Part shown: positions 10,531-15,369 of the stretch, piece after piece
Layout: every line of letters starts with the position of its first letter
Numbering within the stretch: position 1 is the first letter of the stretch
Assembly: GCA_000320545.1 (NCBI GenBank)
Contig: ADNK01000303.1
Coordinates: 1-36,925, forward strand
From: Bigelowiella natans CCMP2755
Lineage: Eukaryota; Protista; Cercozoa
DNA: 36,925 nucleotides
Direction of reading: 5' to 3'
Position numbers and translations under genes: made by a program
The notes under the pieces: model-generated
Database searches by the model: none
What the model was told of the DNA's origin: nothing
The model's input: only the letters and a program-made list of their open reading frames with translations

Positions 10531-11011
10531 TCAATGATGATTGAACGAAGACTTTTCAATTTTCAAGATGCCTCAAAGTTCAAGGCACAAGATTTGTCTC
10601 AAGCAAACATCGTTGGCAGTGATGCAGTGATTGCTGGCGTTCTGGAGTTCTCACTTGTTCCCCGGGACCTCCAGCGTGTCGCGCTGTCATCGGCGCGCTC
10701 GTTCCGCAATGTGAAAACATCAAAAACGTGCACAAACAAACTTGTCGAGCCTCGGAAAGTTCCCTTTTCGCTCTGCGACATCCCATCGGAGCCCGAGCCT
10801 CGATGAATGTGCCCGGCTTGTTGAACGCGGAGTTTGTCCGCCATCACGAACGGCGCTGCCCGCTCAAAGGCAGAGATCGCACACGTTTTTGGATGATTTC
10901 TCCGTTTTTAGCATGTCGCGGAACGTGTTTCACCGCCAACCCATTTGCGTTGGTGCTGCTGCTCAGTATTCCTCCCGTTCCTCCCGTTGCCAAATTCCTG
11001 ATTCTACGACG

Positions 11012-14000
11012 ATGGCAGTTTTCCATGCCCATTACACTTCACCGCGTCCCAGCCGGAATGGAAGATATCGCTTTCATTTACTAACGGCGGTTGCTTTGCT
11101 TACATGTGTTGACGGAAAGTGGCTGAGTAATGGTTGGTGAATTGTGCTTAACTCATTAGTGCGATAAGTATCTAGCTGTAAACTCAAAGTCCTAGTTTGT
11201 TCATGTATCTTCAATTTCCTAGGGAAAATAAAAGTATTGGAAGCCGAAGAGGTACTGAAAAACAATAATTTGTTTTTAATTATCGAATCAAAGCTTCCTT
11301 CTGCATACAGGCAACACCAGAATCGCCTGGATTTACCAAATCCTCTCTACTGAATACAAAAGAATCCGCACGTATGAAGATTATAAACATTTTCAAACTT
11401 TTAGGCCAATGCCAATTTAATCTAATGGAGAGTTTGATCTTTAAATTTAAGCTTTTGGGGGTCCAGACACACAAAAAACTTGTGTAATCGGAGCCGGCCC
11501 TTCTGGACTTTGGGCAGCATATAATCTCCAGCTAAGAGGGTGACCGCATCTTGCAAAAGCAAAAAAATCGTCTTTGATCTTATTTTCCTTGTTAGATACG
11601 ACGTAGTTGTCCTAGATAAGAGTGATCAAGCTGGAGGTCGAGTCAGGGACATTAAATCCCCGAATAACAACACAATATCCCAAGGGGCAATATTTATAAA
11701 CCCTGCAGTGGCTTCAGGTGTGAAAATACGAATTTACCTTATGTGAATACATGTGAATTTATTATATTTTAGAGTAGAGTTTTGAATTACCGAAAAGAAA
11801 TCGTAAATAGAAGTGCTGACGTGTATTGCGCAGATCCCACTAACCCTGTAGCCCAAGTCCTAAGCATGACCGGTACCAAAAGAAATATCCAGTTGAATAT
11901 TTCTTTGATTGGGCATTATTGTCATTAGGACTTTCTGGATTATTGAGGCCTGCTTTTGATATATCAATAACTGGAACTGCCTTTAATTTTATGGATACTC
12001 TTGGCGAGAATCCATCACGATTGCTGAATCCTTATCCCGACTTATTCGATCTAGCGGCCCTTAATTCAGAAAGTATTGCCTACGTATCATTGTATTTCAG
12101 GTATGCCATGTCTAATTCTATCTTAAATGTACATGTATGTGTATATTCTACTGATTCACATTCAAAATATTCTCAGTTTCCTAAGCTTTGTGGGCGGCCC
12201 CACGATACCTGCAGCTCCAATTCCAGCTGATCTACAGCTTCCTACCTTAGATTTTTTAAGGAAAAATGGCCTGCTTGGTTTAGTACCCTACTTGCAGGTC
12301 TATGCTTTATTCCTAATGTTAAATAAAGTGTTTATCATATGATTGATGTCATATTCAGTCGGTCTTCACTTCTTTCGGCTATGGTCGCTTGGAGACCACG
12401 CCCATGCTCTACACATTTAGAAACATCAGTCCAGGTTATATTGCACACTTATTGTGTGTATGTGTGTGCTCATATGATTTAGTGTTGAAATTGATACATC
12501 AGCCCTCTTCCTCCAAGTTCCTTTAATACTTGAAGGAGGTATGGCTCAAGCATTCAAAAGTTTTGCTGCAAGTCAGATCAATGATCTCAGATTAAATGTT
12601 GAAATTGTGATGGTAATAGAACCTATATTGTACGGTAACCCTATGCGTAATGGGGTTCAATATAATTTCTCTAAGGTTATACGGCTTAAGATGGGAGGTT
12701 CCTACATAATTTATGAGCAGGAAGGAGCATCTCGATTATTGTAGCTATATTTAATCAATTTGTTATTTACTGACGAGGCTAAGAGATGAAACTTAGGCAC
12801 TGCAATGAACTCGTAACCGCATTTCCTCAGCGTTTAGAGGTTTTCATAGCAGATAGAAACAAGTACAGACATATACCAATGTTCTTACTTCGCCGTTGAT
12901 AGGATATGGCCTTCCTACTTTTGGATGACATAGAGAAAACCATATTCAAAGAGGTATTTCAATGTCACATTTTTGCAAATTCGTAGATTCCACCAAAATA
13001 GCTTCCCACGGCACACATTTATCAAGGTTAAAACTGTCCCATACTCCTTCCATGCGGTCACTATCTTTCCAGGACTTCCACACAATGTAAGCGACTAAGT
13101 CACTATTATGTTTTGTTTTTAATCATGATGTTGTGTTAATATGATGGCTCTTTTAATTTTGGAATTATCGACGACTGAATCTCAGACTGGATTGTATCCG
13201 AACGGAACACTAGTTACATGGGTACTACATGAAATTGCGGCCATCCGAAGTCGAACTGATAATAAATAACAATACTGCTAAATTGCAGAACTATCGGTCT
13301 CCCTCTTCATTTGATAGTAAGCTACTCACGATACCATAAGTATTATCAAAATAACACGTTGATTCTTTATATACAAAAGGGGGCAACACTGCGGGTAACA
13401 CAAACACCCGACCCCTTGATTTAAAATACGGCCGTGGAATTGCTAATCTTGGTGCCGTATACAACATTCGGGAAAATCAATTTGGAGATGTAAGTACTAC
13501 TGAATCAATTAGCGAATCACAGTCAAGTACACTATTCAACTGGCATTAGGATTGTGCGTTTTGGAGCTCAGATCCGTTCAGCGACGGTGTAAGCCAGGAA
13601 GAGGTTCCTAATTCCTAGTTTTCCAATATGAATTTGGTTTTGATTAAAATGTTTAAATTTAGTTTGAAGAAGAAATTCGGCGGGAAATTGCTTTCTTAGA
13701 TTCGAGTTTGAACGCTACATTTATCTTAGATGCGTAATATTTCCCACATTATTCGAGGAAAAATTGTTGTAAGGGACTGATAAATCTCCTAGGTTTCGCA
13801 GCTACCCGCAATATTTCCCCCATGTCGATTCTCAATCATTAAACGGTGAAACTGCACTGCAACTATATGTTAGGTTCATTTCTCACTTAAAAAACTTATT
13901 TTTAGACTCGTTTTACTCCCGTCTGAAAGACTTGCAGGGGTAGTAGCATTGTGCTTCGCTAACAAGGAGCGTTTTCATTGTTAAAAATAAAAATTCTCAG

Positions 14001-15233
14001 GCACAAGAGTACTTTCCATGTTGGCGGCCTCCTCAATTTCGATTGGGTAGAAGGTTCTATGAGAGCAGCCCAGTTCAGTGACTCAATTAAAGAGATATCA
14101 TTCCATTGTGTTGATGATAATCGAAACCTAAAAACAGGGCTGTTGTAGAGGAATTCTTCCCAGTGCTTACCAGTTCTCCAACTACGTTTTCCCCCATCAC
14201 TTCTGCTCCTACAAATTCCCCGACAACGATTCACCCAAGCACCTCTCCAAGTACTGCCAATCCAAGTCGGAGCCCATCATCCTCCCCATCATCTTCTCCA
14301 ACAACAATTCAGCCGAGTGGAAGTCCATCATACTCTCCAGCTACCATGAATCCGAGTGGAAGCCCCTCAACCTCACCCTCATCGTCGCCGACAGCCTCGC
14401 CTATCACAGTCTCCCCTTCCTCTACATCACCACTAACAGTCGTTCCAACGCGAAGTCCAAGTGCTGAACCGTCAAGCTCACCTTTAACGGTTTCTTCAAC
14501 GAGTGATCCAACTACGATCGCTCCATCTCCTTCGCCGCTTACAATCTCACCTGTGACAGGCAGTCCTTTAACGAGTTCCCCTATCACGATATCTCCAACG
14601 AGTGATCCAACTACGATCGCTCCATCTCCTTCGCCGCTTACCATCTCACCTGTGACAGGCAGTCCTTTAACGAGTTCCCCTATCACGATATCTCCAACGA
14701 GTGATCCAACTACGATCGCTCCATCTCCTTCGCCGCTTACCATCTCACCTGTGACGGGCAGGCCTTCAACGAGTTCCCCTATCACGATATCTCCAACGAG
14801 TGATCCAACTACGATCGCTCCATCTCCTTCGCCGCTTACCATCTCACCCGTGACAGGCAGTCCTTTAACGAGTTCCCCTATCACGATATCTCCAACGAGT
14901 GATCCAACTACGATCGCTCCATCTCCTTCGCCGCTTACAATCTCACCTGTGACAGGCAGTCCTTTAACGAGTTCCCCTATCACGATATCTCCAACGAGTG
15001 ATCCAACTACGATAGCTCCATCTCCTTCGCCGCTTACAATATCACCTGTGACAGGCAGTCCTTTAACGAGTTCCCCTATCACGATATCTCCAACGAGTGA
15101 TCCAACTACGATAGCTCCATCTCCTTCGCCGCTTACAATATCACCTGTGACAGGCAGTCCTTTAACGAGTTCCCCTATCACGGTATCTCCGACAAATAGA
15201 CCTAGCACAGAAGACGATGACGATCACTATTAA
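11012..15233 (+). CDS. Secreted FAD-dependent oxidoreductase (amine oxidase fold, PUFA-isomerase-like) fused to a mucin-like Ser/Pro/Thr stalk, many short introns
   Basis: Signal-like FHLLTAVALLTCVDG; Rossmann motif CVIGAGPSGLWAAYNL (~11481-11530); VLDKSDQAGGRV; QGAIFINP; DLQLPTLDFLRKNG; VFTSFGYG (FGYG 12374-12385); YPQYFPHVD (YFPHV 13812-13826); QGHKSTFHVGGLLNFD; VVEEFF, running into ORF 14163-15233. Several middle exon boundaries were not fully resolved. Confidence 0.8.
14499..15191 (+). repeat. Coding minisatellite, 7 x 99 bp (33-aa unit TSDPTTIAPSPSPLTISPVTGSPLTSSPITISP)
   Basis: Unit starts at 14499, 14598, 14697, 14796, 14895, 14994, 15093; copies nearly identical, with mostly synonymous variants and GRPS instead of GSPL in copy 3. 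Confidence 0.97.
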
Positions 15234-15369
15234 GTAGATTCGAGTGGGAATATATAAACTGAAGCCAGGTAGGATCTCAAACTTTGCTGATTGCGAATCC
15301 TCATTAAAAAAAGTCACCAGTAAAGTATCTAATCATTAGCTATATTAAAGTAATCAATACGTTATCTAG

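What the first reader, a model, noticed from the sequence alone, without database searches (positions are those of the whole stretch)
11012..14170. Flavoprotein resembles polyunsaturated fatty acid isomerases (PAI/PFI type)
Seen after splicing, in order: IGAGPSG, QGAIFINP, DLQLPTLDFLRKNG, FTSFGYG, LNVEIV/RVIR, YFPHV, QGHKSTFHVGGLLNF, VVEEFF. From my recollection of the Cutibacterium (Propionibacterium) acnes PUFA isomerase PAI, these parallel GAIMGVP, DLMLPFDEFLALNG, FTAFGYG, YFPHVS, QGRRNTFYAGEIMSF and LVTRFF. Established: PAI and the red algal polyenoic fatty acid isomerase make conjugated fatty acids. Inference: a secreted enzyme producing conjugated PUFA (defence or allelopathy), possibly horizontally acquired and then intronised. 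The family also contains oxidases with other activities.
Basis: partly seen in the sequence, partly recalled or inferred. Interest (0 to 1): 0.72.

Follow-up and report, generated by a model that had tools for sequence, protein, structure and literature searches.

The report
Stalked PAI-family flavoenzyme in an alga

Summary

I fetched a real PAI ortholog (L017; PDB 2b9w, E=1e-293).

A profile of 110 PAI-family proteins matches ten separate exons in colinear order. E8, E9, E10, E19, E20 and E21 each beat 500 of 500 shuffles. A control oxidase profile matches only the two Rossmann exons. Of 31 placeable family-conserved columns, 24 are identical and 4 similar.

The PAI-like domain ends exactly where a 358-residue tail begins. 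The tail is 69% Ser/Pro/Thr and holds seven 33-residue repeats. An N-terminal signal-like peptide suggests secretion.

Family membership is therefore well supported. Isomerase activity, kinship to the red-algal PFI and horizontal origin remain untested.

PAI's gate residues Arg88 and Phe193 are not conserved in the family and cannot be placed here.

The assembled mRNA retains a 56-nt intron (12741-12796) carrying an in-frame stop, so only a spliced minority form could give the full protein.

The parts
10956..11011 (+). 5' untranslated part of exon 1, as far as the RNA contigs reach
   Evidence: RNA contigs start at 10956 (X3) and 10991 (X4). There is no ATG between 10956 and 11012.
11012..11132 (+). 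E1: start codon and signal-like peptide (basic n-region, hydrophobic core at residues 21-33)
   Evidence: Kyte-Doolittle maximum 2.57 at LLTAVALLTCV. The donor at 11133 is inferred from unitig breaks.
11133..11222 (+). Intron 1 (90 nt), partly retained. Retention gives a stop at 11138.
   Evidence: Separate contigs cover 11104-11251 at depth 34/32, against 108/148 for the spliced contig.
11223..11251 (+). E2, linker
11311..11371 (+). E3, linker
   Evidence: Joints; frame
11452..11539 (+). E4: Rossmann strand 1 and GAGPSG
   Evidence: Family profile E=4e-8, positions 9-29. Pfam DAO/NAD_binding_8 weak.
11596..11717 (+). E5: end of beta-alpha-beta (VLD), GGR, QGAIFINP
   Evidence: Pfam Amino_oxidase 3e-4. 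Family profile 7e-5, positions 35-69.
11834..11872 (+). E6
   Evidence: Joints
11929..12100 (+). E7: variable part of the substrate domain, with no recognisable match to the family
   Evidence: No close relative in metagenome contigs.
12177..12297 (+). E8: DLQLPTLDFLRKNG block
   Evidence: Family profile positions 140-162; 0 of 500 shuffles reach it. 8 of 14 identical to PAI 140-153.
12359..12434 (+). E9: FTSFGYG...P..Y block
   Evidence: Family profile E=1.8e-5, positions 168-190; 0 of 500 shuffles.
12503..12612 (+). E10: EGG.QA...RLNVEI
   Evidence: Family profile positions 205-230; 0 of 500 shuffles.
12676..12740 (+). E11a
12741..12796 (+). 56-nt GT..AG intron retained in the assembled mRNA, with an in-frame TAG at 12742-12744. 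Its removal is needed for the frame of all later exons.
   Evidence: RNA contigs run unbroken over 12675-12837 in X3 and X4, and bin depth equals the depth of that contig alone. It is the only GT..AG option that removes the stop and keeps the whole of E11a. Its composition is intron-like.
12797..12839 (+). E11b: NELVTAFP (PAI DVLVLTVP)
12903..12953 (+). E12: FLLLDDIEKTIFK
   Evidence: Family profile positions 266-278
13027..13086 (+). E13
   Evidence: Joints
13186..13221 (+). E14
   Evidence: Joints
13289..13316 (+). E15
   Evidence: Joints
13380..13489 (+). E16: mostly an insertion relative to PAI
   Evidence: Joints. The E13-E18 region is about 34 residues longer than in PAI (my count).
13550..13603 (+). 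E17
   Evidence: The end is inferred: E17-E21 must sum to 284 nt of the RNA contig, and 54+71+53+34+72 does.
13663..13733 (+). E18
   Evidence: Inferred as for E17; GT..AG and frame
13793..13845 (+). E19: QYFPHVDSQSLN
   Evidence: Family profile E=0.0024, positions 367-378; 0 of 500 shuffles
13906..13939 (+). E20: FYSRLKDLQ
   Evidence: Family profile positions 381-389; 0 of 500 shuffles
14001..14072 (+). E21: KSTFHVGGLLNF, C-terminal FAD-site block
   Evidence: Family profile E=6e-4, positions 392-411; 0 of 500 shuffles
14138..15236 (+). E22: last 7 residues of the PAI-like domain (VVEEFF), then a 358-residue Ser/Pro/Thr-rich tail ending STEDDDDHY, then the stop
   Evidence: The RNA contig enters at 14138. 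Composition is S 27%, P 23%, T 20%, with no hydrophobic end. RNA runs through the stop into 15400.
14493..15190 (+). 7.1 tandem copies of a 99-nt (33-residue) unit within the tail, 97% alike

Best explanation
This is a nuclear, spliceosomal-intron-rich, transcribed gene. Once all 22 introns are removed, it encodes a 904-residue protein with four parts:
- a signal-like peptide
- a linker of about 40 residues
- a FAD-binding domain of about 468 residues belonging to the PAI family, the family of the Cutibacterium acnes polyunsaturated fatty acid isomerase (PDB 2B9W)
- a 358-residue Ser/Pro/Thr-rich tail, probably O-glycosylated

Shown: the exon structure, expression, family membership, retention of most family-conserved residues, and the architecture.

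Inferred:
- The protein enters the secretory pathway and sits outside the cell, or in its mucilage, held or extended by the tail.
- It binds FAD.
- Like PAI, it takes a free polyunsaturated fatty acid into a hydrophobic channel and moves a double bond by transient hydride transfer to and from the flavin. This would yield conjugated fatty acids without net redox change.
- Output of full-length protein is limited by poor removal of one 56-nt intron, and to a lesser degree of intron 1.
For: Gene model and expression:
- Spliced RNA contigs in runs of two studies show GT..AG joints.
- The frame is open for 2715 nt once the 56-nt intron is removed.
- Exons are 44.7% GC and introns 31.9%.
- Against a related strain, exons carry fewer differences than introns, and 3 of the 4 exon differences downstream of the retained intron are synonymous.

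Family membership:
- A true PAI ortholog was fetched.
- A profile of 110 family members matches E4, E5, E8, E9, E10, E11b, E12, E19, E20 and E21 in colinear order.
- 0 of 500 shuffles reach the scores of E8, E9, E10, E19, E20 and E21. A protoporphyrinogen-oxidase-like control profile matches only E4 and E5.
- 24 identical plus 4 similar of 31 placed family-conserved columns.
- The 54 residues from YFPHV to FF align to PAI 370-423 without a gap, and PAI ends where the tail begins.

Lipid substrate:
- Family members are fused to a fatty-acyl-AMP-ligase-type domain, a carrier protein and a thioesterase (P0146).
- Another is fused to a catalase-related domain, a carrier protein and a hydrolase (P0075).

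Secretion:
- Hydrophobic core at residues 21-33.
- Mucin-like tail.
- Two of the bacterial relatives that score best against the window (P0097, P0120) also start with signal-like peptides, judged by eye.
Against: - The dominant assembled mRNA in both RNA runs keeps the 56-nt intron with an in-frame TAG. No spliced form was visible there.
- Only one member of the family (PAI) has a known activity.
- Some members carry a 4Fe-4S domain (P0084), which suggests real redox chemistry in parts of the family.
- Departures from the family consensus: E/D57 to S (my placement), K45 to R, A178 to M, D248 to N and G382 to S, and W368 probably to P (my placement, not placed).
- The region corresponding to PAI 78-139, which holds gate residue Arg88, has no recognisable match.
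- The signal peptide is judged by eye and hydropathy only.
Confidence: 0.5

Rival explanations
1. It is a PAI-family flavoenzyme with a different chemistry: an oxidase, desaturase or reductase acting on a lipid or another hydrophobic substrate, not a redox-neutral isomerase.
For: - The family is large (477 clusters at E<=1e-30, 1377 at E<=1e-10) and named only 'FAD-dependent oxidoreductase'.
- One member carries a 4Fe-4S dicluster domain (P0084).
- PAI's gate residues are not conserved in the family.
- The window differs from the consensus at several conserved positions.
- Identity to PAI is only about 41% within the best local blocks, and clearly lower overall.
Against: - The only characterised member is an isomerase.
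- The blocks nearest the flavin and channel (FT.FGYG, YFPHV, TF..G....F) are kept.
- Fusions with acyl-activating and carrier domains point to fatty-acyl substrates.
Confidence: 0.3
2. It is an unproductive or decaying gene. The transcript that accumulates keeps a stop-bearing 56-nt intron, so mainly a truncated product of about 290 residues, or none, is made.
For: - RNA contigs of two studies run unbroken through 12741-12796.
- Bin depth there equals that of the one contig, so no alternative path was laid.
- Intron 1 is also partly retained, which gives a stop at 11138.
Against: - Twelve downstream coding segments stay in frame up to the stop at 15234. All other introns are spliced.
- Downstream exons still match the family profile and keep conserved residues.
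- 3 of the 4 strain differences downstream are synonymous.
- Contigs drop minority forms, so a spliced fraction below the retained one would not be seen (tool note).
Confidence: 0.12
3. The protein is not extracellular. The leader is a bipartite signal that takes it to the plastid or the periplastidal compartment of this secondary alga, or it stays in the endomembrane system.
For: - About 40 residues lie between the hydrophobic core and the Rossmann fold.
- Earlier notes on this window describe signal-plus-transit-like leaders in this genome.
Against: - The linker has a net charge near zero, with a run of Glu. This is unlike the positively charged transit-like peptides known from chlorarachniophytes (my own knowledge).
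- A tail of 69% Ser/Pro/Thr is typical of secreted, O-glycosylated proteins.
Confidence: 0.12

Closest known systems
PAI, polyunsaturated fatty acid isomerase of Cutibacterium (Propionibacterium) acnes (PDB 2B9W; ortholog L017 fetched here)
   Same: - Same family by colinear profile matches over the whole domain.
- GxGxxG, an acidic end of strand 2 and GG(K/R).
- The DL.LP...FL..NG, FT.FGYG...P..Y, G.Q..F and LV...P blocks.
- YFPHV to FF: 54 residues without a gap, with the same C-terminal end of the domain.
   Different: - The window gene is eukaryotic, with 22 introns.
- It adds a signal-like peptide, a 40-residue linker and a 358-residue Ser/Pro/Thr tail.
- It has an insertion of about 34 residues (E16) and a 4-residue deletion near PAI 187-198.
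- GGR replaces GGK, and Ser stands at the E/D57 position.
- The region of PAI 78-139 is unrecognisable.
- Arg88 and Phe193 equivalents are unresolved.
- The activity is untested.
[quoted passage not shown]
   Same: By the literature (PMC7700177 and my own knowledge), PFI is an algal enzyme that makes conjugated trienes from arachidonate and EPA. It is reported as a glycosylated flavoprotein with a signal peptide. It is therefore the same kind of organism, and secretory like this protein.
Bacterial PAI-family 'FAD-dependent oxidoreductases', including P0097, P0120, P0068 and the multidomain fusions P0146, P0075 and P0084
   Same: They share the catalytic domain. P0097 and P0120 also begin with signal-like peptides. 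The fusions point to fatty-acyl substrates.
   Different: - None is close to the window protein; the best summed tblastn scores are only about 95-150 bits over short blocks.
- Their extensions are enzymatic or iron-sulfur domains, not a Ser/Pro/Thr tail.
Generic flavin amine oxidases and protoporphyrinogen oxidases (Pfam PF01593)
   Same: They share the N-terminal FAD-binding Rossmann part (E4, E5).
   Different: Nothing beyond E4 and E5 matches them. The substrate-domain and C-terminal blocks are PAI-family specific.

Membership tests
PAI family (FAD-dependent, type structure 2B9W) | N-terminal dinucleotide-binding motif: GxGxxG, an acidic residue ending strand 2, and GG(K/R) | tested here: met
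   GAGPSG, VLD and GGR are in E4 and E5. Pfam and family-profile matches support them. K45 is R and E37 is D, both conservative changes.
PAI family (FAD-dependent, type structure 2B9W) | Family-specific block DL.LP...FL..NG - 11 residues - FT.FGYG.....P..Y | tested here: met
   It is present across E8 and E9 with the same spacing. The DNA pattern for it found 21 bacterial family genes, including the PAI ortholog. Profile E=1.8e-5 for E9. This feature was used to fetch the family, so it is not independent evidence.
PAI family (FAD-dependent, type structure 2B9W) | C-terminal block YFPHV...Y...QG...T(F/Y)..G....F...FF ending the protein domain | tested here: met
   E19 to E22 carry 54 residues ungapped against PAI 370-423. 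Profile E-values are 0.0024, 0.22 and 6e-4, and 0 of 500 shuffles reach each. This is independent of the fetching pattern.
PAI family (FAD-dependent, type structure 2B9W) | Colinear similarity along the whole domain, and specific to this family | tested here: met
   Ten exons match in order at profile positions 9 to 411. The chain score for E10-E22 is z=5.1 over residue shuffles, but only z=2.5 over exon-order permutation. The control oxidase profile matches only E4 and E5. E6, E7 and E13-E18 have no recognisable match.
PAI family (FAD-dependent, type structure 2B9W) | Residues conserved in at least 85% of 110 family members | tested here: met
   Of 37 such columns, 31 could be placed: 24 identical, 4 similar and 3 different (A178M, D248N, G382S). 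G29 and G392 fall on split codons that read G.
PAI family (FAD-dependent, type structure 2B9W) | Channel gate residues Arg88 and Phe193 of PAI (a feature of PAI itself; my own knowledge of Liavonchanka et al. 2006) | tested here: inconclusive
   They are not family-wide: R in 25 of 110 and F in 26 of 110. In the window, LRPAF may pair with PAI LRREF, which would put Arg one place earlier. A 4-residue deletion makes the Phe193 partner ambiguous between L, F and V of LFLQV.
PAI family (FAD-dependent, type structure 2B9W) | Three-domain fold with a hydrophobic channel to the flavin | not testable with these tools
   Exons are too short to fold.
PAI family (FAD-dependent, type structure 2B9W) | Redox-neutral double-bond isomerisation of free C18-C20 polyunsaturated fatty acids | not testable with these tools
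   This requires a biochemical assay.
Ptilota filicina PFI | Sequence similarity to the cloned PFI | not tested
Flavin amine oxidase superfamily (Pfam PF01593) | Match to the Amino_oxidase profile | tested here: met
   E5 alone reaches 20.6 bits, above the 19.8 cut-off (E=3e-4). Full-length family members match PF01593 strongly.

The most novel reading that the evidence does not exclude
A marine protist displays a PAI-type fatty-acid double-bond isomerase outside the cell on a glycosylated stalk. The enzyme turns released EPA, ARA or linoleate into conjugated polyenes that act as defence or signalling compounds. Production of the active enzyme is gated by regulated removal of a 56-nt stop-bearing intron. 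The gene came from bacteria and has since gained 22 introns.
Probability: 0.2. Interest if true: 0.7.

Novelty: new variant of a known kind. Interest (0 to 1): 0.45.

Why it matters
PAI is the only double-bond isomerase of free polyunsaturated fatty acids with a known structure, and it is of interest for making conjugated linoleic acid.

Conjugated polyenoic acids occur in algae, but apart from the red-algal PFI their enzymes are hardly known.

This gene gives a concrete, expressed candidate in a chlorarachniophyte. Its architecture (leader, catalytic head, mucin-like tail) suggests that the chemistry happens outside the cell.

It is also a clean case for two further questions:
- How does a gene of an otherwise bacterial-looking family become a 22-intron nuclear gene?
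- Does selective retention of one short intron control the output of an enzyme?

Tried and rejected
Searches that gave nothing useful:
- Single exons against PDB (E5, E8, E9, and a stretch holding E21) gave no PAI hit at E<=10. The exons are too short for single-sequence search.
- Pfam and NCBIfam, run per exon, recognise only the Rossmann exons.
- The search for homologous proteins with the tail exon, in the hope of catching a transcript-derived or annotated product of this gene, returned only low-complexity look-alikes.
- The same tool with a family alignment headed by a 759-residue member was dominated by that member's close kin and did not reach the window's protein.
- E7 against metagenome contigs: 599 pattern matches, none a relative.
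- A pattern scan of viral contigs gave one chance hit outside any ORF.
- Papers on PAI's residues: the structure paper is not held, and other papers gave no residue detail.

Methods that did not work:
- MAFFT alignment of exon rows with the family scattered the short rows (A2), so that alignment was not used.

Tests with limited power:
- The chain-score test is only moderately strong against permutation of exon order (z=2.5).

Rejected readings:
- Bacterial contamination: the gene has 22 introns and sits among eukaryotic genes.
- A GPI or membrane anchor: the protein ends in STEDDDDHY, and RNA runs through the stop.

Disclosure: exon nucleotides were strung together in memory only to count G+C. 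Nothing joined was translated, saved or searched.
Full report
**The locus**

I did not verify this. Region 11012-15236 has no long ORF except a repeat-rich one at its end. That is the picture expected of a eukaryotic gene with many short introns.

**Expression and exon structure**

Twenty public runs in seven studies hold part of the stretch, most with just under half of its sampled words.

I laid four runs:
- Two runs (X3, X4; different studies) each gave a contig of about 1.9 kb that skips a long series of GT..AG intervals. These are spliced mRNA.
- A third run (X1, another organism label) gave unspliced contigs 95-99% alike. This is genomic DNA of a related strain.

The tool listed 15 joints.
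- The five joints between 13603 and 14138 I placed myself. I required GT..AG, an open frame, and a total of exactly 284 nt, which is the length of the RNA contig between its known anchor points. The sum 54+71+53+34+72 fits.
- Intron 1 (11133-11222) follows from where the assembly graph breaks. It is retained in part of the transcripts (depth about 33 against 108-148).

The model has 23 coding segments and 22 introns of 56-116 nt. Exons are 44.7% G+C and introns 31.9%.

**One intron is not removed in the assembled mRNA**

Both RNA contigs run unbroken over 12675-12837. The depth in that bin is exactly that of the single contig, so no alternative path was laid.

Read in the frame of E10, this segment hits TAG at 12742.
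- All later exons are in a frame that requires removal of a piece whose length is 2 modulo 3.
- The only GT..AG candidate that removes the stop and keeps the whole of E11a is 12741-12796. It is 56 nt, intron-like in composition, and has a CTGAC branch-like site.
- With it removed, the coding sequence is 2715 nt and open to the stop at 15234-15236, giving 904 residues.

Contigs drop minority forms, so a spliced form less abundant than the retained one cannot be excluded. It was simply not seen.

Purifying selection on the downstream part is suggested, on small numbers:
- In the enzyme part, exons carry 7 strain differences in 1616 nt, while introns carry 16 in about 1500 nt.
- 3 of the 4 differences downstream of the stop are synonymous.

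**Getting real PAI sequences**

Single exons are too short for ordinary searches:
- PDB searches with E5, E8, E9 and a stretch holding E21 found no PAI.
- Pfam and NCBIfam saw only the Rossmann exons.

I therefore wrote the block that spans E8 and E9 (F-L-x2-N-G-x11-F-T-x-F-G-Y-G) as a degenerate DNA pattern. By my estimate about 0.07 random matches are expected in 596 Gb.

The pattern hit 21 bacterial loci. One is from Cutibacterium sp. V947, and its 424-residue ORF is PAI itself (2b9w, E=1e-293).

**Is the window protein a member of that family?**

A profile of eight bacterial sequences, searched against 1.84 billion representatives, found 477 clusters at E<=1e-30 and 1377 at E<=1e-10.

From 110 full-length members I built a broader profile and scored each exon peptide separately, with Z=23:

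| Exon | E-value | Profile positions |
|---|---|---|
| E4 | 4e-8 | 9-29 |
| E5 | 7e-5 | 35-69 |
| E8 | 0.13 | 140-162 |
| E9 | 1.8e-5 | 168-190 |
| E10 | 0.18 | 205-230 |
| E11b | 3.9 | 253-258 |
| E12 | 1.8 | 266-278 |
| E19 | 0.0024 | 367-378 |
| E20 | 0.22 | 381-389 |
| E21 | 6e-4 | 392-411 |

The ten exons fall in perfect order with the expected spacing.

Further tests:
- None of 500 shuffles of E8, E9, E10, E19, E20 or E21 reaches the observed score.
- A control profile of protoporphyrinogen-oxidase-like flavoproteins matches only E4 and E5.
- A chain score over E10-E22 alone, which is independent of the fetching pattern, lies 5.1 sd above residue shuffles but only 2.5 sd above permuted exon order.
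- Of 37 columns conserved in at least 85% of the family, 31 can be placed in the window: 24 identical, 4 similar, 3 different. Two more (G29, G392) fall on split codons that read Gly.
- From YFPHV to FF the window and PAI align over 54 residues without a gap. PAI ends exactly where the window's tail starts.

I regard family membership as established at the sequence level.

**What differs from PAI**

- The window protein adds a signal-like start. It has a basic stretch and then a hydrophobic core at residues 21-33.
- A linker of about 40 residues follows, with net charge near zero.
- There is an insertion of about 34 residues, mostly in E16.
- There is a 4-residue deletion around PAI 187-198.
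- A 358-residue tail is 27% Ser, 23% Pro and 20% Thr. It includes 7.1 copies of a 33-residue unit at 97% DNA identity.
- The tail ends in STEDDDDHY with no hydrophobic stretch, and RNA continues through the stop. So there is no membrane or GPI anchor.
- The stretch corresponding to PAI 78-139 (E6, E7) has no recognisable similarity to the family. The family itself is variable there.

**Gate residues**

In the family these are not conserved: Arg in 25 of 110 and Phe in 26 of 110. They define PAI, not the family.

In the window, LRPAF may correspond to PAI LRREF. The partner of Phe193 lies somewhere in LFLQV. Neither can be fixed without a structure.

**Function**

Only PAI has a known activity. 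By my own knowledge of Liavonchanka et al. 2006 (cited in PMC13365329 and PMC13003489), it isomerises free linoleate to the 10E,12Z conjugated form using FAD without net redox change.

Context within the family speaks for fatty-acyl substrates:
- Cyanobacterial 2007-residue proteins combine an AMP-binding (acyl-activating) domain, the PAI-like domain, a carrier protein and a thioesterase.
- Another protein combines a catalase-related domain, the PAI-like domain, a carrier protein and a hydrolase.

One member instead carries a 4Fe-4S dicluster domain, so some members probably do true redox chemistry.

I therefore put the isomerase reading at about even odds within a confident family assignment.

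**Origin**

Every named relative and every nearest ESM Atlas cluster is bacterial, and none is close to the window protein. This is compatible with an old transfer followed by intron gain.

The evidence has three limits:
- I could see only the best 150 of more than 1,300 clusters.
- Exons are too short to find eukaryotic kin.
- No tree could be made.

Kinship with the red-algal PFI could not be tested.

So there was no full-length search, no fold and no tree for the window protein itself.

Noticed in passing
window 12741-12796: A single 56-nt intron is kept in the assembled mRNA of two independent RNA data sets while about 20 neighbouring introns are removed. It carries an in-frame TAG. An ATG at 12786 inside it opens the downstream frame.
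   Followed up: partly
window 11133-11222: Intron 1 is retained in roughly a quarter of transcripts, judged by contig depth (about 33 against 108-148). Retention gives a stop at 11138.
   Followed up: partly
window 10914: An upstream in-frame ATG (MSRNVFHRQP...) lies outside the RNA contigs, which begin at 10956 and 10991. It is probably not part of the transcript.
   Followed up: partly
window 10900-14820 (run X1): A related strain or species (coded organism A) differs by about 1% in introns. Its indels all lie in introns: 18 nt inserted behind 11306, 15 nt missing at 11791, 1 nt at 13116 and 2 nt at 13649.
   Followed up: partly
window 14309-15208, minus strand: A 299-residue ORF lies opposite the tail repeats. 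It is a mirror effect of the repeat composition, and there is no evidence of a gene.
   Followed up: no
P0146 cluster (cyanobacteria, 2007 aa); P0075 (1192 aa): The PAI-like domain is embedded in multidomain proteins. P0146 has AMP-binding, PAI-like, carrier protein and thioesterase. P0075 has catalase-related, PAI-like, carrier protein and hydrolase. These look like unexplored fatty-acid-modifying assembly lines.
   Followed up: partly
P0084 (817 aa): A PAI-like domain is followed by a 4Fe-4S dicluster domain, which hints at electron-transferring members of the family.
   Followed up: partly
P0014 (860 aa), P0019 (892 aa): These proteins have two PAI-like domains in tandem.
   Followed up: no
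L020:3149-4411 (Schaalia naturae): A PAI-like ORF whose N-terminus lacks the GxGxxG motif in frame. It may be a frameshift, a pseudogene or an assembly error.
   Followed up: no
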